From positions 693,639-757,638 of the forward strand of contig JAAOMT010000289.1 of the NCBI GenBank assembly GCA_016748015.1: a DNA stretch of 64,000 nt, in the 5' to 3' direction. Below the pieces are notes generated by a model that saw only the letters and a list, made by a program, of their open reading frames with translations, searched no databases and was not told the origin of the DNA. Position numbers and translations under genes: made by a program. This document shows positions 1-12,545 of this stretch, piece by piece (the first letter of the stretch is position 1; every line of letters starts with the position of its first letter). This DNA is from Geosiphon pyriformis uo1. Lineage: Eukaryota; Fungi; Glomeromycota.

Positions 1-754
1 CTGGACTAGCGTAGTAATAAGCGGAGATCGGTGGATGATGAGAAACTTGTTCTGAGACAAAAAAAGCTTCAGTTTTATCGGCAAACTGCCATCGTGCGCG
101 AAAATGTTCTCCTAACACAGGATTGTATGGTTTTTTTACCCCCTACAATATATATATATATATTATAAAGATAAGTTTAGGATTGGATTGGATTTGCAAG
201 CAAGTGAACATAACAACACAATAAAAGCCTATCAACCTTTGGCTTAATATGCCAGCCAGACAGATAATATCGCACAACATTCACAAACCGCTTAACAGGA
301 TCGTCTTGCTTTGATATTCTGAATTCAAGGATGAAAGAAAAAAGTGATGAGGCATAGAGAAACCTCCAGGGATATATTTTAAATACCCAAATGTTTGCAA
401 AAGTGAGAAAAAACTGTCGATTCGGATTTAATTATAGTTGAAAACCGTCTTAAATGATCAATATAAGTCTTATCAGATCATAATAGACTTTGATTTATAG
501 TGAGCAAGGGGAATTCTGTTACTTTAGAAAGAAAATGTTTTAAGAGCAATCAAAACAAACCTGAGAATCAGTTCAGGATGACTCATAAAATCGGTGATCC
601 TCTCTAGCATACTTCGTGGTTCCAAAACAAAAGTTGGCAATGTAACGCGATGTAAGTCCATGCCTTTTCGAAGTTGTGAGATGAGCCCGAGTAGAATGCT
701 CCTAGGCTCATCATCAAGAACTTCGGCATCATTAGAATTTTCCTCCTCTGCCAT
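1..754 (-). CDS. Oxysterol-binding protein (OSH6/7-like), 5' part; continues beyond window start
   Basis: Exons ~754-561, ~319-238 and ~142-1 joined by GT-AG introns give MAEEEN...[23 protein letters not shown]...[22 protein letters not shown]...[16 protein letters not shown] is the OSBP signature. Confidence 0.93.
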
Positions 755-1020
755 GGGTGATTAGGTTTATTGATGTAAAGAGATTCTAGAAATGAAATTT
801 TGAGCTCAGATTTATCTAATGAGGTTGTAGATCGCCACAGAAAAAACAAACGTCTAAAATTCGGGATTGGCTCTTTAAAAAGTGAACGAGAAACCAGTGG
901 TCATGGACTTGAGCCGTGAATACTATTCATCTGTTTTATGCCCGTTCATGCAGACCCGTCGAGGATTAAGTGGTAACACAAGTCCCAAAACCCCGCGGTA
1001 AATATTTGATATGTTACCAG

Positions 1021-1525
1021 TTATTTGGTCCTATCAGTCCCAAATTTTAAGTTTTTTTAATTTTTGGCGGGAAAATTTTAAAATATATTATTGTGCTTTT
1101 AAAATTTAAAAATATTATTATAGCATTTATTATTATTATTATTTTATTATTATTTTATATTTAAATATTTTATTTTTATTTTTTGTATAACTTTATTTAT
1201 TAACATAAATAATTATTGTTTTTTAAATTATTTGGTCATAATTAATTTTATAATTTAAAATGAAAATTTATTTAATTTATTTATAAATTTGATTAAAATT
1301 TGGTCAAAATAATAGTAATTAAAATAATTATTATAATTTTAAATGTTTTATTTTTAAATTTTAAATTTTTAAATTTTTCAATAATCATTTGGATACTTTT
1401 AAATAAATTAATAAATCTTTTAATAATTAAAACAATTAAAAAACATATAGTTTTTAAATAAATACATTATTATTAACATAAAAGAATAAAAAAAATGTTA
1501 AATTTTATTTTTATGCAAATAAAAA

Positions 1526-1580
<55 letters not shown>

Positions 1581-1947
1581 AAACATTATTTATTATAAAA
1601 AATTATATTTAATTTACTAAAAATAATTTTTTGTTTAAAGAGTTTTATAAATATATATTTATGTATATATATTGTTTAAATATTTAAAGTGGTTGGGCTA
1701 CATCGCAAGCATGTTAAATAAATAAATAAATATAAATATATATTTATATATTTGAAATTCATGTGAATAAATTTTAAATAAATAAATCTTTTGGCAGATT
1801 CTTTTTAAAAAATTATAAAATACTTCTTTAATAATTAATATCAATCAAATATAGATTAGATAATGAATATTAGGAGCCACGTTTAATATGAAACATATAT
1901 TTGTTGAATTTATTTAAATAACGGCTGGGATCTCACACTATATACAA

Positions 1948-1978
<31 letters not shown>

Positions 1979-2200
1979 AAACTTTTGATAATTTAAAGCT
2001 AGATCAAATATATAAACTCATCATTAAACTGTATAAAAATATAAAAATATACATATTTAACATTTTGGTGTCTGACGAATTTAGCAAAATTTTTTATCTG
2101 TTAATAAAAGATTTTATTCAAAACAAAAAAGTGTTGACTAAATCTTTTTTTTTTTTAATCAATTCAATTGTCAGCGTAAATACTTTTTTTTTTTTGTGAA
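1021..2200. mobile_element. AT-rich island of heavily decayed repeats, including LINE-like 3' ends with (TAAA)n tails
   Basis: Very low GC. GGGCTACATCGCAAGCATGT-(TAAA)n at ~1690-1735 and GGGATCTCACAC..(TAAA)n at ~1925-1981 resemble the element ends at 18.7 kb and 24.1-24.2 kb. Confidence 0.5.
1528..1579. repeat. (TTA)n microsatellite, ~17 units
   Basis: Perfect trinucleotide run seen directly. Confidence 0.95.
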
Positions 2201-2943
2201 TATTTCATAATTGTAACCCAAGAGGTAGTATTGGTACCCATTTCATTTACTGAATCATATCAAAATGAGAAATTCTTATCTCGATCAAAGAAAAAAATAA
2301 GTTAATTAAAAAGTGGTGTCAAAAAATTTTTAGATCAATTATTTACTTTGCGTAATACATATTTTATTTTGCTCTTGTTGGAAAATGAGCATGGCAAATA
2401 TTACCTTTCACTGAATCTCGTTAATTTTTCTCATAATTTAGGCTACCATTAAAAACTCTGTACTGTGCCAATCAAATTGTGGAACTTTTTTTGACTGCGC
2501 GGGAACAAACAAAATTCTGCGGCATTTTTTACATTTACTTATTCTTTACGATTATCAGGCTAAAAACTAAGCCTGCTTTGTTGGCTACATCGATCTAATT
2601 CTATGGATCTCGTAAACAATAGATCATGGAAAAAAAAAAAAAGGTTTCAGATTAAAATTACCCAAGTAAATCGCGTCCTTGGGCAATAGTCTCACGAAAA
2701 ACCCTAAACATGATTTTCGGGTGTTCTGAAATTTGAAAACTACGGTGATCGCTGGTAAGGCCGAATTAATATCTCGTTCATTAGAAAATAACAAGGGTGG
2801 GATTCATCCCGAATTCCTAAAATATGTTAATGATCGGTAAATCATCCTGTTAAAATAGAAATTCTCCAGACCGCCTGCAGTGCATTGACCGTTTGACAGG
2901 TTTTCTGCAAGTTCATCATCTGCAATATTCTTTTACCAAAAAA

Positions 2944-3060
2944 GGTTCATTGTCACCGCAGTTAGATCCTTTTGGATATCCAATATTAAAATAGACTGTA
3001 TTGGTTCATTATCACCGCAGTTAGATCCTTTGGATATCAAATATTAAAATAGACTGTATT
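2944..3060. repeat. Tandem duplication of a 58-59 bp unit
   Basis: ggttcattRtcaccgcagttagatcctt(t)tggatatcMaatattaaaatagactgtatt at 2944-3002 and 3003-3060, with 2 substitutions and 1 indel. Confidence 0.95.
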
Positions 3061-3154
3061 TAACTACAACCTCACTTGTTTAAGTTCCTTCTTCCGATTA
3101 CAAATATATAATCAAAGTAAATTTCTTATCATTAGAGCAAGAAACATTAAAAAA

Positions 3155-4760
3155 ATGCCTCTTCGTAAGACAACTAATAAATTATTTTCCAGGAGGGTAT
3201 CGTCCAGTAATCGTTTGCTTCCGGGTCAAACAAGGCTTGACCAGTACTTTACTGGTCCTTCTAATACCTCGACACCTTATAGCAACTCGACAATCTTACA
3301 ACTACCCTTGACAACTTCACTTCAATTCAAACGAAAAACATTGGGGGCTGTATCTATAGTTCCAGAAGCTAAGCGAGCCAAAAAAGAAAATGAGTCCCGA
3401 CAATGGGCAAGGACCCCCGCGCAACTTGTCGGACCTTCCGGAAACTCAACCTCCACTCAACCGCAACTATCAACGCCACCCCAATCTAAACGACCAAGAT
3501 TGGAGGATCCACAGGAGAAAATAGTCAAAAAAGAAAACGAGGGGCAATGGGGAGGGGTTTTTAGTGACATTTTGGACCGAAAAAATAACTCTGCTGCCAC
3601 GCGCATTCCCTACACCCTTAAAAATGATAAGGGAAAAGCCAGGGAAGTTCCAACTAGATCCCCGACACCTAACACGTGTTTAAAAGATGTATTAATTGAT
3701 TTAAACGCTGGGGAACTCAGCGAGGAAAACGATCCCCAACAATGGGAAAAAACTTTTGAGGATTTCGTTGGCAGCTCCTCATCCTCCCATCCCCCACCTC
3801 AGCTTAATAATAAGCCAAGGTTTAAACTTCAAATTATTGATTCCGAAGCCAAACAATCTAATAAGGAAAATATGGTGTATCACGATATAGGAAACTTTAA
3901 CTACCATACTACAAGTCGGGTTTACTGTCATAATAAGCCCAAGGGAAAAAGTAGGACGGGTCTGAGTACCTTCCCCCTTTCACTTTTGGAGGATCAAACA
4001 ACCGAAGGATTCAAAAAAGAAAATGATGTGCAAAAATGGGCCAGAGTTTTTGAGAATTTTGCTACCCAACAGAATAAACATCGTTACATTAGTAGAATAC
4101 GAGTCAGGGACCCAAAAGGTCGAAGAAAATTTTCCTTCCCCTATGACAAACGTATCGACTTACCCAAAGGGCAGGGAACCGGTTACAATAGCTACCATCC
4201 TAACGTCCTGGAGAATGGAAAATTTGATAGAGAGGTTTTCAATTCGCTGCCGGAAGGTATATATTATATTTTATATAATTTTAGTCGATTAGCTAATGTT
4301 CATTCAATTTTAAGATCTTAAAACCTATATATCGAACGAATCTCGCCACTTCCTACGAAATAAGAAATACGAGGAAGATAAAAAGTTTTGGATGGATGTT
4401 CGGCTTAAGGCATGGAAAGAACGGACTCGCTATAAGAGACGTCGATTCCCGATCCCGAACATTAAGATTGAGCCAAAAAAGAGGCCGGTTCTCCAAAGCA
4501 TGACCACTGTTGAGGAGATTCGAGCTATTATCAGGGTATGGATCCGTGATAACCTGAATTCAGAAAACTTGGAAGAGCTACTCCGATTCTTACTAGAGGT
4601 TATAGCCGATAAGGAATTGGAAAAAGTTCAATTAATCATCCGTTACTTGCAAAGGATAACTGAAAACTTGGGTGATGAATGGAAGCAGGCAACTTACTAT
4701 ATCACAGAGAAGATCAATGATACCGTCATGGAACTCTATGACGGTTCACTTTTATTCTAA
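3155..4760 (+). CDS. REV1-CTD/UBM/PIP-box protein lacking a polymerase domain (~515 aa, 2 exons: 3155-4256, 4315-4760)
   Basis: A GTATAT...CTAAT...TAAG intron (4257-4314) joins both ORFs in frame and creates UBM-like FDREVFNSLPEDLKTYI. The C-terminus RPVLQ..EEIRAIIRVWI..KELEKVQLIIRYLQR..W..A..I..Y..SL matches the REV1 C-terminal helical bundle. N-terminal QTRLDQYF fits a PIP box. Confidence 0.8.
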
Positions 4761-5644
4761 TTATCAGAGTAGAGATACTGAAGGGTGGTATTATTTTTTG
4801 AAGTCCTACTTTTCTGCTTTTAACAAATGAATTCCTGAAATATTTACTAATCGGCTTCATATTTATTTTCATTAATTTAAAACATTGGCTTCCATAAAGA
4901 ACAAGAAATTCTAATTTGATAGTCTGATTATCTTTTTTAGCGAAACACTAATTATTTGAGTCATATTTTATAGGTAATTGCGCGTCTCCGAATCCTAACT
5001 GATGCGAGACATCCCAAACTGTAGATTTAAATCATATTCGATTCAGGAGCTATAGGTACGAGTTGGTGGGTGCGGCTGTTAGGCTCCGAGCTTAGCATGT
5101 CCTGATGCATGATGTCCAGGATGATTTCTATTAAATTTATGGATCGAATTTACACCTTTTCGAAACAGAAGATTAGAATTATACATTTTAGTTAATCTTA
5201 CGAAAATGAATCATGTATTCTCTCTTCTTCTTCAAAAAAAAAAAGGCAAATATGGAATGAAAATAAAATCATGGGTAATAAAAAAGGAAAAATAAAACTT
5301 GAAACTTAAAGAAACCTATTAATCCTCATTTTTGATTACCTAAAACAACCCTTGTATAGGGGGAGAACTTCATTAGTTTAATCAAATTTATCTCTATTGC
5401 AGAAATTTGATTGATAACGTTTTTGTTACTTAGGATATCATTGGCAAAATTGAGGAATATTAAATCGAATCTAATAATGTTCCCTCAGAATAATAAAAAT
5501 TATACAAAGATAAACTGGTAACGGTATGTAGGATTAACCACTATTAAAACATCATTTAACTCGATTTTATTGAATCTTATAACAATGCCATGAGATTTAT
5601 CTGCCAAAATCCTTAGGTATTATTTACAATTAAATAGTCCCCAA

Positions 5645-8600
5645 TTAGTCCATATCCATTTTTGTCTCTCCCTCCTCCTCTTCTGAAGTTTCTTCAATTG
5701 GTTCGTGTAAATCAACCTCGAATTGAATGTCTTGATCAGAGCCCATATACGAGTCAGACATGAAATAAAGGGTAAGAGTCTGTCGGCCAATTCTTTCGGG
5801 GTAGGCGACCTCTAACTTTATATCTAGTTCCTTGTTCAAGGTGATCCGTTTTATACCCAAAAGTTTATTGTCCTCTGGATCACAAACAACTATCCACCAA
5901 CCTTCATCTTTCTTGTGTGGAAAGTAGGGCGCTATTACCGGGCCGATATCATTTTCTTCGTCCCGTTTCAAATGTACTTCAATATTTCCTTGAGCGCCAG
6001 CCAATAATTCATCCTCGTCCAACACTTTCACTGAAACCTCAATGTCTGGATAGCGGTTGGAAAATTTTGCGACTTCATTGAATTTTGAATCTTCCAGTTG
6101 AAGTATCTTTCGAAGTTCATCCTCATCCCTTTCCCCTAATTCAAATACGTTCTCAACCCCATGCTTTTTACAACGCTGAATAAGAGCATCGGTAAAGTAA
6201 GGGACCTGTTTTAACTCTGAATCCCGATCCCATACAGCTTGAACACACATCTGCGACAATTCCATCGCAGCTAGTGCGGGTTTTAGCCATCCTTCAGAAC
6301 TGATCACATCGACAATGGCTTGAAGCAAAGGAATGATTTTGCCTAATATCATGGTTTGATCTGATTGCAAATCTGGGGGCAATTGATTCCTAGAAAAGTG
6401 TGCTTGCAACAAAATGTTCGTCTTGACATGAGGTGAATTAAATTTAGGCGATTTGAGTTTAGCCGGGACTCTATCATAAATTGCTCTGAGGATCTTGTCT
6501 TCGTGATGGCGTATTGGGATAGATTCAAATTCCGCAGCTGAAGCAACAATTTCTAAAAGTCCACGAATTTTGGTCTTGGCATTTAGACTCATACTAAACA
6601 TTTCCACTGTTATATAGCTGACGTTATAATATGCGGCAATCATCCCTAGGTTAAGGCTTGTTACATCCATTTCATCTTCTAAGCTTATACATTTAGAAGC
6701 AGTCAGATCATTCACAGTTGTCTCAACCAATTCTGATAAATGATCGGACAAGTGTCTATGGTCCGATCCTTGCATGCCATAATAGTTGGGGTTTTCAACC
6801 ATTCGACGATACAAAAATGTCCAAGTGAGATAATCGACTGCATCTTGTTTGTTTTCAATTGTTCGTGTCATGATCTCTGCATTGAAATGATCATGTAAAA
6901 AATGATCCAAATGGGATTCCACTGGGAGGGCTTCGTATAAAAATTTCTTGTAAAATTCCTTTTTGATAGCTTGGCACATTAAAACACATCGCCCTGTATC
7001 ATCTTCTCGGGGGCGGCAGGCTCGACCCATCATTTGAAGAACGTCAGTGATTGGATAGTCAGCGTAACGATGTTCTTTGCCTTCGAAATATTGAGTTCCC
7101 ATTATTACAACCAGATGACAATTCAAATTTAAGCCCCAACATGTATCGCGTGATGCTACCAAAACTTGAATGGCTCCCGCTTGAAATAAACTTTGCACAA
7201 TTTCTTTATCGTTCGGGCTCAAAGCCTCATGATAGAAACCAACACCATGCTGCAAAGTTGCAAATAAAGCTTTATCATTAATAGCTTCCAAATGCTCTTG
7301 AATATCTTCAATATTTGCATGCAAGAACCGATTGGGAACACCATCGGCAGCGCTGAAAGTAAGTAAATCTAGTGCTGTCAGGCGACTTTGTTTACGAGAG
7401 GGGACAAAAACAATAGCCGGTCTCTCTAAGGAATATGCTGTAATAGAAACATAAACCGGTTTCGCCATGGCCATCATCAATGAAGCAAAATGAGGTATAT
7501 TATAATTTTGAATGTGTATTTCCAAGGGCACAGGTCGAACACTTGGATGGAAATTGAAAATATTTGCAGGCTTCGCGGCAATCCATTCGCCAAGATCTAG
7601 GGCATTGGCCAAAGAAGTACTTAAACAGACAATACGAATTTGGTTTGCTATTTGACCCGTCTTTTTTTTCTCTTCACCAATTTGCTCAGCTATATAACGC
7701 ATACGTGAGACCACAATTTCATATGTTGGCCCAACATCACTGCCAATCAAATGTATTTCGTCCGCAATGAATAAAGCGACTGTTTGAACATTTTTACGCT
7801 GTTTCCACCTTCTAGATATCAAATCCCATTGCGTAGGTGTAGCGAAGATTACATCACCGCCTTCCAAGAGTTTTAAGTCAGCGCTAAGTTCTCCTGTAAG
7901 AGCGACAATACTCTTACCACCTTGAATATTGCCAAACTTCTGTCGCCACTCTACAACTTGATGGTCGACTAACTCTTGAAACGGTGCAATATATACGCAA
8001 CGTCCTGGGTTTGGCTTAGACCATAAACGGAGCAAAGCGAATTCAGCACACACAGTTTTACCAGAGCCCGGAGGAGCTCCAACAAATACGTTGTCGTCAG
8101 AGTTATATAGGGCATTAAAAACTTGTGTTTGAATAGGATTAAACTTATCAATCCATGTATTATAGACTCTTTCAAATTCGCTATTGCGTAACGCGGTGAC
8201 AGGCAAAGGCTGCATGTCCAACAATTCTGTATGTGGTGGATACTTCTTGGGGAGAATTAGATGTCGGAAAGATACAGGTAATTTTGTCTCGCAATGCAAC
8301 CATCGGTCAGAAATGACGGAAATGAAATAATTTGGTGGTAAAGGTTCAAAAAGTGGTACGGTAAAGGTAATGATATGATCCTCTTCGGCATACTTTTTCT
8401 TAAGGATGAAAGAGTCGTGGTATAGAATCACATCGCCATCAACATCTTCAACCAAAACCCAAAATGCCTCACCCGTACCATGAATATTATCATCCCACTG
8501 GAAGTCAGGTGTTATGGTGAGTTCGACTTTGAGCAATGATCGTGTAATAGGTTGGACGAATGATTTCAGGGATAACTTTGGGAACTGATGAACAAGCTTA

Positions 8601-11600
8601 TAAATTAATTTGGCAAGATTTTGACCAACTAATTGAGACAGTTCAGGAACTCCTAAATCAAAGTATCTTTCCCATTCAAATTCTTTCTTTTCTATCTTCT
8701 TTATATGCTCAAATTGCAATCTTTTGAATTGACGAAAAGGTGTCATGGAAAGCCACATTTGCTTTTCAACCATCTTGCAAAGATCCAAAGCTCTTCGGGA
8801 AAGTTGAGACCACCCTCGTTTAAGGCAGATCTCAAACATAGCTCGAAGAAGCCGGCTAGCTGACTGCGTGACATATACCATATCTGATACAAGTGCGAAA
8901 CCTTCTAATTTAAGTTGAGATATGTAAGCCTGAAGTAATACATTAATTTTAGAGGTTGGTTCCTCGATTCCTTCCTTGACAGGAATAGGTACACGCTCCA
9001 AAAGTTTTGACAATTCGAGCTTCTCTTCTTCGCGTACAGGAATGTATTTGAATTCATCAGAGAGGGCAAAGACACGAAATAGCTCTATATGTCCCATCAT
9101 TGGTTTTAAGTGCTGATTGTAAGTCGCCATAGAATTGTGTGTTATATAATAGTGCGAGGCGATCCGTCCCAACTCAGTGACTTGGAATCGGCCAGTCTTT
9201 TTATCGTATTTTATTAAATTGGATTTATCAAGGAGCAATGCCGCAGAATGAATTAAATCTACCCGCTTCTGTTCAAGGTAAGGGTCCTCATCTAGGTAAT
9301 CTAATGTGATGCCATATAATGTGGGATTGCGTAACATTCGAACATAAAGGTATGTATAACCTAACCATTGTACGGCTTCATCACGATTACGCACTGTTCC
9401 CAAAACAATTTCAGCATTCAAATTATCTCCCAATTTACTGATAAACTGACTTTCGATTGGCAACTGTTGATTGAGTAAAGATAAATAATATTGAAGCTCA
9501 CTATGAGATGTTATGATTATACCTTCGCCAAATGTGTCGTACTGAGGGCGACCAGAGCGACCCAACATCTGGAGGACGTCTTCAGGGCTAAGTTCAACCC
9601 ATCGACCTTTTTCGGGTGAATAAATTTGCGTACCCTTGATAATAACGGTATGGGCAGGTAAATTAACACCCCAAGCTAAAGTTGCAGTAGATACAAGAAC
9701 TTGGATATGTTTATCAGAAAAAAGTCCCTCAACAAGCTCACGATCGGTACGATTCATTCCAGCATGATGAATTCCAAAACCATATGGCAATAAATCTTGA
9801 AGGTTAGGGTCTTTGGCCGTGGGCGCTTCAGTTTGTAAAATTTCACGACTTGCAGAATCTTCTCTTAAAAATTGACCAATCGTGTCCTTTTCCAAAGCCA
9901 TATCACGAATAGTTTTGGCTGTTTTGGCTGTTTCTTTACGTGAATGTACAAATATTAGTACTTGATTGTTCCCAGCCTGAGCCATTACTTTTTGATAGGC
10001 AACTTCATTCATAACTTGAAATCGTTTGATAGCTTTCTTTTCAGTAATGCCTATGTATTCCTGTTTTAAAGGGCATGGTCGGTAACTACTGTCAAAGTGA
10101 AACAAACCCTTATTGGGATCAACTCGCAAAAATGTGGCCACATCAGCGTAATTTGGTAAAGTAGCTGAAAGACCCACTAATCTTATCATCTCTTGCGTCT
10201 GCTCCATGTGACGAATTGTACGTGCTACTATACTTTCGATCACAGGGCCACGATCATCATGGAGTAAGTGAATTTCATCGAATATAATGAGCTTTACAAG
10301 ATTAGTATAGCTACGGTCGGTAGCTTTCCGTGTGATAACATCCCATTTTTCTGGGGTTGTGACAATAATTTGGGTCTCCGAAATTTGTTGTTTGGTGAGT
10401 TGCCTATCACCCGTTAGCTCCGAGACTTTGATACCAAAAGATGCCAGACGAGTTGAGAAATTACCCACCATTTCTTGTACTAGAGCTTTCATAGGCGCAA
10501 TATATACAATTTTGAAGTTATCTGTATTGATGAGCCCAGTTTCTTCGTTGCGATGTTTTGAAAGTTCATTAAGAATACAGAGCATAGCAACGTTTGTTTT
10601 ACCCGAGCCAGTTGGGGCACATAGCAACAAGTTATCATCGGCTCCAAAAGCAACAGGATATAATTTGCTTTGAATCCGATTGAGATTTTTTGCCCCCCTA
10701 AAAGCATCCTGTATCCATGCTGGGATTTCCTTGAGAGGAATGAGTTTTTCATCTTCCGCAAATGGTTTTGGTTTTGGTGGGGGAACATGTATTTCTTCAT
10801 ATCCTTTCATTGGTTTTTTAAATGACCCTTGAGGCAGTGTACAATTTTTATTAGACATCAAGTGGCCACCTTGCGTGAATGCCAAAGATTCGAGATCGAT
10901 TACTGCTTTGGGCATAGCTGACGCCCCCAAAGGAGCCTTGGCTTTAATCGTGATGGATGGACCATGCGTTATAGATGGCTGATCAATTTCCATAATATTT
11001 TCTACAACCCCTCTGCGGGCTGCGCCTTCTCCGCGACGGACTCTTTCACCTGCAAGTTCTTTTAATATCCACTCCAGACCTTTTTCCTTAATTTCATTTT
11101 CTATTTCTAAACGATGGGGGTCTTCATTTCCAACTCTGGCCAGTTTTGTGCACCAAACTATAACATCTCTATTTGCGGTTAAGGTTTTTACAAGGTCAAA
11201 TTTATCATAATCATATAAGTTCATCAAAGCATTTTCGCATTCACGAGGATCATAATCTGAAGCAAGAATGAGCATCGTGCTGGACGTTTTTTCTTGGGCA
11301 GTATGAGGGTCTGAATAATAATTGGAAACCAGGCGCTGTAGCCAAAAGGCATCAATGTCATGAGGTGAAATTTTTTTTTCAGACTGTATGTCAGTTAACT
11401 TCTTAGATGGGAAATATCCAGGTCCTTGTACTGTATTAAAACCTTCGGCCTCTTCGTCTGAAAAATACTCATCCCTTTCATCACCAATCTGGCCCAAGCC
11501 TAAGATACCAGTTGTTTCTGCTTCAACTCCACCCTCATCTTCCCCATCATCTTCTGATTCAACCTCATATGTTCCATATTCATCTTCATCCTCTTCTTCT

Positions 11601-12343
11601 TCATCAAAGACAACTGCCACACCTAGTTCATCATCGATATCACCGGCACGATCACCGTCTTTGTCAATTTCCATCTCATCATCAGCTCGGTAATCAGTTA
11701 ATTTTTTGACAAGATTGACCAGTTGAGCAAAACGATCCGAAGCGATTGGGCCAATAGCCACTTCAATCTGCTTCAATTTATCGAAATCTTTCAGAGTATC
11801 AGCTTTCAAGATTTTTAAAACATCATCCGCTGCACTGCGAACAACATCTTGACTTTGATCGCCTAGATTCTGATATACAAATGCGAGAATTAATTCATAG
11901 GCTTCACGTGTTTCTTTTGTTCTTGGCCGATACGAAAGACTCTCCACATCTTCTGTGGCCGTCAACACGTTCGAATAGCCATATGCCTTTTTAATGTCTC
12001 TTTGAAGCAAATTTCAAGCAAACAATAGTTATTTAATAGGTTTAAAAAAGTGAGTAACATATTTTTCTCAAAATCAAACCTACGTTTCTTCTTTTCGCCT
12101 TCGCTTTTTTTCTTCTGCCTCCTCAGCTTTACGTGGTTTCTTCTTCTTCGCCTCTAGATCCTTCACACTACTTCTCTGTGCTCGGGTACCAAAGTCTTTA
12201 GGGTTAATCTTTCCCCACAAAGATTCTGGCTCACCCGAAGGTTCATGATCTCGGCGTGGTAACTCGGATCTATTAGCTTGAAGTACGAGATTCGAGTTTG
12301 CGGTGTACTGATACTGATTGCCACGGGCAATTTGTTCAGCCAT
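5645..12343 (-). CDS. BRR2: U5 snRNP 200 kDa RNA helicase Brr2 (exons 12343-12084 and 11999-5645)
   Basis: Two Ski2-like helicase cassettes ([12 protein letters not shown] and [12 protein letters not shown]) plus two Sec63 units. N-terminus [14 protein letters not shown] is conserved. One GT-AG intron at 12000-12083. Confidence 0.98.
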
Positions 12344-12545
12344 TAATAAAAAAAAATTACTGAAGAAGGATGAGAACGAAAGCCAGAATGCTCAAAATGA
12401 TGGCAAACTCTCGCACAAAGAATAGATATAGTTTCCGTTGAAAAGTGATCGTTACCACTGTTGACACTTTCAATTTATTTAAATTTCTAATGAGATCATT
12501 TAGATTGCGTAGATCATTTCAGCAANNNNNNNNNNNNNNNNNNNN

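What the first reader, a model, noticed from the sequence alone, without database searches (positions are those of the whole stretch)
3155..4760. Polymerase-less REV1-like scaffold: PIP box + UBM + REV1-CTD
Seen: splicing intron 4257-4314 fuses two anonymous ORFs into ~515 aa. It has QTRLDQYF at residues 25-32, FDREVFNSLPEDL across the splice junction, and a C-terminal ~90 aa matching the REV1-CTD pattern. Known: REV1 is BRCT + Y-family polymerase + UBMs + CTD, and the CTD recruits Pol eta/iota/kappa and Rev7/Pol zeta; QxxLxxYF binds PCNA; UBMs bind ubiquitin. No BRCT or catalytic motifs are visible, and only ~1 kb of non-repeat DNA lies upstream. Inference: a stand-alone adaptor or decoy that docks on ubiquitinated PCNA and recruits or sequesters translesion polymerases, with a PIP box replacing the BRCT. 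I do not recall this architecture being described.
Basis: partly seen in the sequence, partly recalled or inferred. Interest (0 to 1): 0.85.

Follow-up and report, generated by a model that had tools for sequence, protein, structure and literature searches.

The report
REV1 scaffold without its polymerase
The fungus Geosiphon pyriformis seems to have kept only the protein-docking tail of the DNA-damage-bypass factor REV1 and lost its enzyme part, which would explain how it keeps polymerase zeta although published surveys score REV1 as lost in its whole group.

Summary
Real. The gene (G9A89_020801, Geosiphon pyriformis) ends in a true REV1 C-terminal domain (Pfam above cut-off; model matches REV1-CT structures, rmsd 1.2-1.5 A) preceded by one UBM. 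It is the genome's only REV1_C match; no REV1 polymerase core was found here or elsewhere (only Pol kappa, Pol eta). The 58-nt intron sits exactly where Mucorales REV1 genes have one, so this is REV1's own 3' end. A metagenome ortholog shares 47% over 180 residues with saturated silent sites. Published surveys call REV1 lost in all Glomeromycotina, yet Geosiphon alone keeps Pol zeta; I confirmed REV3, not REV7. Rev7-binding residues are kept; the inserter-pocket aspartate (human D1186) is Asn in both orthologs. Best reading: a catalysis-free adaptor bringing Pol zeta to ubiquitinated PCNA. Caveats: the single RNA contig uses another acceptor (108-nt intron), giving a 372-aa product without the domain; the PIP box is unverified (1.7% by chance); the ortholog's N-terminus is unseen. 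New: four to five internal KEN/W repeats and a separate BRCT-only gene. The scan's notes on this genome hold no earlier report of it.

The parts
2884..3154 (+). 5' leader; cDNA contig starts at 2884 behind a 10-letter non-genomic tag that resembles a template-switch adaptor (resemblance from memory); no ATG before 3155
2945..3062 (+). 59-nt tandem duplication inside the leader
3155..4256 (+). Coding exon 1 (367 codons + 1 base); mostly low-confidence/disordered in the model, no Pfam family, single copy in the genome
3227..3250 (+). Canonical PIP-box pattern QTRLDQYF (aa 25-32); function and conservation untested
   Evidence: 1.7% of shuffles carry such a pattern
3383..4060 (+). Four to five dispersed copies of a [K/E]EN-x(2-5)-W-x3-F repeat (aa 77, 126, 190, 237, 288), alike also at DNA level; four contain a KEN tripeptide
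   Evidence: 0 of 50,000 shuffles reach four copies; pattern chosen after the fact
4181..4204 (+). GYNSYHPN motif before the UBM, identical in the ortholog, not seen in canonical REV1s aligned here
4223..4349 (+). Ubiquitin-binding motif (aa 357-379), split by the intron; aligns with the last UBM of fungal and fish REV1
   Evidence: (Pfam UBM E 0.21, below cut-off)
4257..4314 (+). 58-nt phase-1 intron, ancestral REV1 position; keeps the frame into the CTD
4315..4381 (+). Alternative acceptor at 4364 (108-nt intron, seen in RNA contig) and the premature stop it reads into at 4379-4381
4315..4760 (+). Coding exon 2: long helix (aa 367-409), linker, CTD, stop
4485..4757 (+). REV1 C-terminal four-helix bundle with N-terminal hairpin (aa 425-515); Rev7-face L469, E470, Y509, L513 kept; N452 in place of human D1186
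524..754 (-). Upstream neighbour: first coding part of an oxysterol-binding protein gene, divergent; bounds the locus
5645..12010 (-). Downstream neighbour: 2121-aa BRR2-like helicase ORF, convergent; bounds the locus
   Evidence: name from sequence motifs, own knowledge

Best explanation
This is the REV1 gene of Geosiphon after loss of its BRCT and whole Y-family polymerase core. The 58-nt splice form makes a 515-aa protein: a disordered N-terminal arm with a PIP-like motif and short repeats, one UBM, a long helix and the REV1-CTD. It most likely works as a catalysis-free adaptor: the UBM (and possibly the PIP motif) hold it on monoubiquitinated PCNA at a stalled fork, and the CTD binds Rev7 and so brings Pol zeta to extend past the lesion. 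Binding of inserter polymerases may be weakened (D1186N). Shown: domain identity, orthology, selection, absence of a detectable core, presence of REV3. Inferred: all binding steps, and that enough of the 58-nt form is made.
For: REV1_C above cut-off and fold match; sole REV1_C in the genome; no REV1 core with Pfam IMS, IMS_C, IMS_HHH_1, Mucor REV1 or a 7-sequence fungal REV1 profile; intron shared with Blakeslea, Hesseltinella and Dichotomocladium REV1; ortholog 84/180 identical, pS 0.78, pN 0.37, similar branch lengths 0.61 and 0.73; REV3 in the genome; preprint 10.1101/2025.09.02.673565 lists Rev3 and Rev7 for Geosiphon only among Glomeromycotina; no close relative among 1.84 billion representatives except the ortholog; Rev7 hydrophobic cage L1203/Y1244/L1248 conserved; REV1 catalysis is dispensable for TLS and BRCT competes with PIP motifs for the same PCNA site (PMC11276120).
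Against: The only RNA contig shows the non-productive 108-nt splice. REV7 was not found by my own HORMA search, which also shows that this genome search can miss divergent intron-rich genes. PIP and UBM are statistically weak on their own. The ortholog contig (944 nt) does not reach the N-terminus. In yeast the BRCT/M1 region contacts Rev3 and DNA, and it is missing here. Isolated human CTD is dominant-negative (PMC12452859).
Confidence: 0.6

Rival explanations
1. Decaying remnant: the gene was functional until recently but in Geosiphon is mostly mis-spliced, on the way to the loss seen in other Glomeromycotina.
For: RNA contig uses the frame-breaking acceptor at 4364; N-terminal 340 aa have no homolog and look rebuilt by internal duplication; relatives lack the gene.
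Against: Both exons are stop-free over 515 codons; branch site and canonical acceptor intact; Geosiphon branch is not longer than the ortholog's; interface residues kept; assembled contigs keep only one path of a splice bubble.
Confidence: 0.13
2. Split REV1: the polymerase half exists as a separate gene that the assembly lacks or the searches missed, and this gene is its scaffold half.
For: Fungal REV1 genes are intron-rich (13-17 introns); assembly BUSCO 90.8%; search scores only best candidates.
Against: The same profile picked up a 29-aa Pol eta exon and a distant BRCT; two proteome surveys also found no REV1; no remnant within the window or 10 kb upstream.
Confidence: 0.08
3. Two-gene scaffold: the separate 203-aa BRCT-only gene (G9A89_022326) supplies the M1-helix/BRCT function in trans, and this gene supplies UBM plus CTD.
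For: Its best solved-structure match is REV1-BRCT (E 6e-12) and it has an M1-like basic helix aligning to Mucorales REV1 N-termini.
Against: None of its four introns matches the three in Mucorales REV1-BRCT; only about 35% identity; from memory it resembles a small BRCT-only family that coexists with full REV1 in other fungi (not tested here).
Confidence: 0.09
4. Decoy or brake: the protein sequesters Rev7/Pol zeta and limits mutagenic bypass, or serves a Rev7 role outside lesion bypass (cell-cycle control, in line with the KEN repeats).
For: Isolated CTD is dominant-negative in human and yeast cells; KEN tripeptides are APC/C degron-like (own knowledge); altered RIR pocket.
Against: Dominant-negative action works by competing with a native REV1, which this genome lacks; the UBM is retained next to the CTD; the human effect needs D1186, changed here.
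Confidence: 0.1

Closest known systems
REV1 (eukaryotic Y-family dCMP transferase and TLS scaffold; Pfam REV1_C PF16727)
   Same: CTD sequence and fold, preceding UBM, shared intron, Rev7-binding residues, tree position among fungal REV1.
   Different: No BRCT, no polymerase core, no PAD, one UBM instead of two or three; new disordered arm with PIP-like motif and repeats; D1186N.
Engineered REV1-CTD fragments (PMC12452859)
   Same: CTD without catalytic core.
   Different: Artificial, expressed beside native REV1, dominant-negative; here natural, under selection, and the only REV1-derived CTD of the genome.
Bacterial ImuB of the ImuA-ImuB-DnaE2 mutasome (own knowledge, not tested)
   Same: A Y-family-derived protein without catalysis that links the sliding clamp to an error-prone extender polymerase.
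   Different: ImuB keeps the polymerase fold with dead active site; no sequence relation to this protein, which has dropped the fold altogether.
PIP plus ubiquitin-binding readers of ubiquitinated PCNA, such as Spartan/DVC1 and Pol eta/iota/kappa tails (own knowledge)
   Same: PIP motif combined with a ubiquitin-binding module.
   Different: None carries a REV1-CTD; canonical fungal REV1s checked here have no canonical PIP pattern.

Membership tests
REV1 | C-terminal four-helix REV1_C domain | tested here: met
   Pfam 35.5 bits over 26.5; Foldseek rmsd 1.2-1.5 A to 4gk0/2lsi
REV1 | Y-family polymerase core (IMS, thumb, little finger) | tested here: not met
   No hit in the gene, the window or 10 kb upstream
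REV1 | N-terminal M1 helix and BRCT domain | tested here: not met
   No BRCT in exon 1; cDNA starts at 2884 with first ATG at 3155
REV1 | Ubiquitin-binding motif before the CTD | tested here: inconclusive
   Aligns to last UBM of other REV1s with shared intron but Pfam UBM E 0.21, below cut-off (Mucor REV1 is also below it)
REV1 | Descent from the REV1 gene (orthology) | tested here: met
   Same phase-1 intron in three Mucorales REV1 genes; groups with fungal REV1 99/97 in a 20-row tree with thin sampling; only REV1_C in the genome
REV1 | Rev7-binding surface (L1203, E1204, Y1244, L1248) | tested here: met
   L469, E470, Y509, L513; sequence only
REV1 | RIR pocket (L1159, L1171, L1172, W1175, D1186, V1190) | tested here: inconclusive
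   Hydrophobic positions kept; D1186 is N in Geosiphon and the ortholog, D in 19 of 19 others
REV1 | Physical binding to Rev7, ubiquitin and PCNA; need for Pol zeta mutagenesis | not testable with these tools
   No complex prediction or experiment available
PCNA-interacting (PIP-box) proteins | Conserved QxxLxxFF-type motif in a disordered region that binds PCNA | tested here: inconclusive
   Pattern present in a low-pLDDT region; 1.7% chance; no ortholog N-terminus to test conservation
ImuB-type inactive polymerase scaffold | Retained Y-family fold without catalytic acidic residues | tested here: not met
   No polymerase fold at all; analogy of role only

The most novel reading that the evidence does not exclude
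A natural, fully non-catalytic REV1 in which a PIP box took over from the BRCT, the CTD specialised on Rev7/Pol zeta (D1186N), and a two-acceptor splice switch plus KEN-type repeats set how much mutagenic bypass the cell allows; it was kept exactly as long as Pol zeta was kept in Glomeromycotina.
Probability: 0.3. Interest if true: 0.85.

Novelty: new variant of a known kind. Interest (0 to 1): 0.72.

Why it matters
Genetics has long suggested that REV1's docking role matters more than its enzyme activity; this looks like evolution running that experiment. It gives a minimal natural scaffold for testing what Pol zeta needs from REV1. It also revises a published account (Rev1 lost first, then Pol zeta, in mycorrhizal fungi): what went first may have been only the catalytic part, with the scaffold kept until Pol zeta itself was lost, which removes the oddity of Pol zeta without REV1 in Geosiphon. 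Surveys that score REV1 by its polymerase domain would miss such genes elsewhere.

Tried and rejected
Word-index homolog searches with exon 2 and with aa 340-515 found nothing but the protein itself. ESM Atlas gave no usable hit for aa 60-345 and only weak BRCT leads for the BRCT gene. Other short 'CTD-only' database entries are not precedents: P0007 and P0006 lie directly behind REV1 polymerase exons and P0004 behind REV1 linker exons. A weak thumb-domain hit was XPF/RAD1. Re-initiation at ATG 4392 after the premature stop was rejected: that Met is Lys in the ortholog. Transposon origin of exon 1 was rejected: single copy at DNA and protein level. A PEX5-like WxxxF reading of the repeats was considered and left as a chance likeness, untested. 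The bacterial promoter scan is not applicable. Paper searches found no description of a natural polymerase-less REV1, in a library that lacks most subscription papers. Paraglomus occultum CAG8575874.1, listed in the preprint's Rev1 row, could not be fetched.

Full report
Observation. The window holds an ORF from ATG 3155 and a second one ending at 4760. Removing 4257-4314 (GT..AG, 58 nt, single branch site CTAAT at 4293) joins them into 515 aa; of all nearby acceptors it is the one that keeps the UBM whole and the frame open. The result is identical to the public model KAG9299630.1, hypothetical protein G9A89_020801 of Geosiphon pyriformis. Exon 2 scores above the Pfam cut-off for REV1_C (35.5 bits against 26.5, E 1.5e-8, whole model covered), its solved-structure hits are all REV1-CT, and an AlphaFold model (pLDDT above 90 over the bundle) superposes on human REV1-CT with rmsd 1.2-1.5 A. 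Exon 1 has no Pfam match and is modelled without a folded domain, although it had no alignment depth there.

Method note. Searches were first run exon by exon by reference. The spliced model of the ortholog was built only inside scripts and was not sent to any search tool, so a search with that joined model was left out.

It is REV1's own tail. The intron lies in phase 1 between the LP-x and the D/E of the last UBM. Blakeslea, Hesseltinella and Dichotomocladium REV1 have an intron at exactly that place and phase (Mucor plumbeus lacks it). In a 20-row tree the domain groups with fungal REV1 (99/97), outside Mucorales, with thin sampling. REV1_C matches only this locus in the genome.

No polymerase half was found. 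Pfam IMS finds two loci, Pol kappa and Pol eta by their sequence; IMS_C finds Pol kappa; Mucor REV1 finds Pol kappa and this CTD; a profile of seven fungal REV1 N-terminal halves finds Pol kappa, a 29-aa Pol eta exon and one BRCT; a thumb model adds only XPF. Local searches of the window and 10 kb upstream show no remnant; the gene is flanked by a divergent OSBP gene and a convergent helicase gene, with no assembly gap before position 12526. The cDNA contig begins at 2884 and has no ATG before 3155. Limits: the search scores only best candidates, missed REV7, and the assembly is 90.8% BUSCO-complete.

Selection. Among 1.84 billion representatives the only close relative is a 944-nt metagenome contig (L010, SRR32799307; 80 bits, next 49). 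Modelled with the same phase-1 intron and a second, U12-type AT-AC intron, it aligns at 84 of 180 residues; synonymous sites are saturated (pS 0.78) while pN is 0.37, and 51 of 84 identical residues use different codons. The pair is a supported clade (99/93) with similar branch lengths. The contig stops before the N-terminal arm, so it is unknown whether that organism also lacks the polymerase. Other short REV1_C entries in databases are pieces of full genes.

Context. [quoted passage not shown] PMC11061109, which included this genome, also calls REV1 absent from Glomeromycotina, and REV7 too. I confirmed REV3 exons in the genome but not REV7. So the one species with Pol zeta is the one with a REV1 tail.

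Surfaces. By alignment to human REV1, the Rev7 hydrophobic cage L1203, Y1244, L1248 and E1204 (PMC8468184; PMC7181697) are L469, Y509, L513 and E470; K1211 and R1215 (PMC12452859) are both Arg. The RIR pocket keeps its hydrophobic residues, but D1186, which binds the backbone of the FF motif, is Asn in both Geosiphon and the ortholog and Asp in all 19 others. That the inserter side is weakened is inference.

The N-terminal arm. QTRLDQYF fits the PIP pattern and lies in a disordered region, but 1.7% of shuffles hold such a pattern and conservation could not be tested. It is a plausible substitute for the BRCT, since yeast Rev1-BRCT competes with PIP motifs for the same PCNA site (PMC11276120). 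They may be degrons, binding helices or neutral duplication products.

The splicing problem. The only run that holds the locus is one set of assembled contigs. Its contig covers 2884-4851 and skips 108 nt, 4257-4364. That form reads into a stop at 4379-4381 and gives 372 aa with a cut UBM and no CTD. Contigs keep one path of a bubble, so the 58-nt form is not excluded, and the 50 nt between the acceptors code for residues conserved in the ortholog. Still, the non-productive form is at least common. This could be regulation or decay; the data cannot tell.

A second gene. G9A89_022326 (203 aa, another contig) is an M1-like helix plus a REV1-type BRCT. It shares no intron with Mucorales REV1 and, from memory, resembles a stand-alone fungal BRCT family; a split-gene origin is therefore not favoured but not excluded.

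Mechanism. Most likely (0.6) the protein is a catalysis-free adaptor: UBM and perhaps PIP on ubiquitinated PCNA, CTD on Rev7, delivering Pol zeta, while Pol eta and kappa reach PCNA by their own tails. REV1's dCMP transferase activity is described as dispensable for lesion bypass. A decoy role is less likely because the dominant-negative effect of isolated CTD depends on competing with native REV1, which is absent. Rivals: decay (0.13), decoy or non-TLS Rev7 role (0.10), two-gene scaffold (0.09), unseen polymerase half (0.08).

Verdict. It descends from REV1 and works like its scaffold half, but fails the enzyme-family tests (no core, no BRCT). I found no description of a natural polymerase-less REV1 in the searchable literature. 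New variant of a known kind; interest 0.72, held down by the RNA result, the unverified PIP box and the single complete example.

Noticed in passing
L010:517-596: The ortholog's CTD is interrupted by a U12-type intron (ATATCTTT donor, TCCTTAAT branch site, AC end) that Geosiphon lacks; removing it restores the alignment.
   Followed up: partly
L029:1441-2296 (G000 contig C777, minus strand): 203-aa gene G9A89_022326 with M1-like helix and REV1-type BRCT, no other domain; four introns, none shared with Mucorales REV1.
   Followed up: partly
window 5645-12010: BRR2-like helicase encoded by one uninterrupted 2121-aa ORF in a genome where neighbouring and repair genes are intron-rich; Pol kappa (L003) is intronless too.
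   Followed up: no
window 2945-3062: 59-nt tandem duplication in the 5' leader of the gene.
   Followed up: no
window 4903-5169: A second cDNA contig starting with the same adaptor-like tag, probably a further piece of this gene's 3' UTR, running towards the convergent helicase gene.
   Followed up: no
preprint 10.1101/2025.09.02.673565 Table S3: Paraglomus occultum CAG8575874.1 stands in the Rev1 row although the text says all Glomeromycotina lost Rev1; may be another remnant.
   Followed up: no
L007 (Pol eta, minus strand, last exon): Geosiphon Pol eta tail carries two FF-type motifs and a UBZ-like zinc finger, so it could reach PCNA without REV1.
   Followed up: no
window 1000-2100: Very AT-rich stretch (12% GC) with ATT and AAAT microsatellites between the OSBP gene and this gene.
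   Followed up: no
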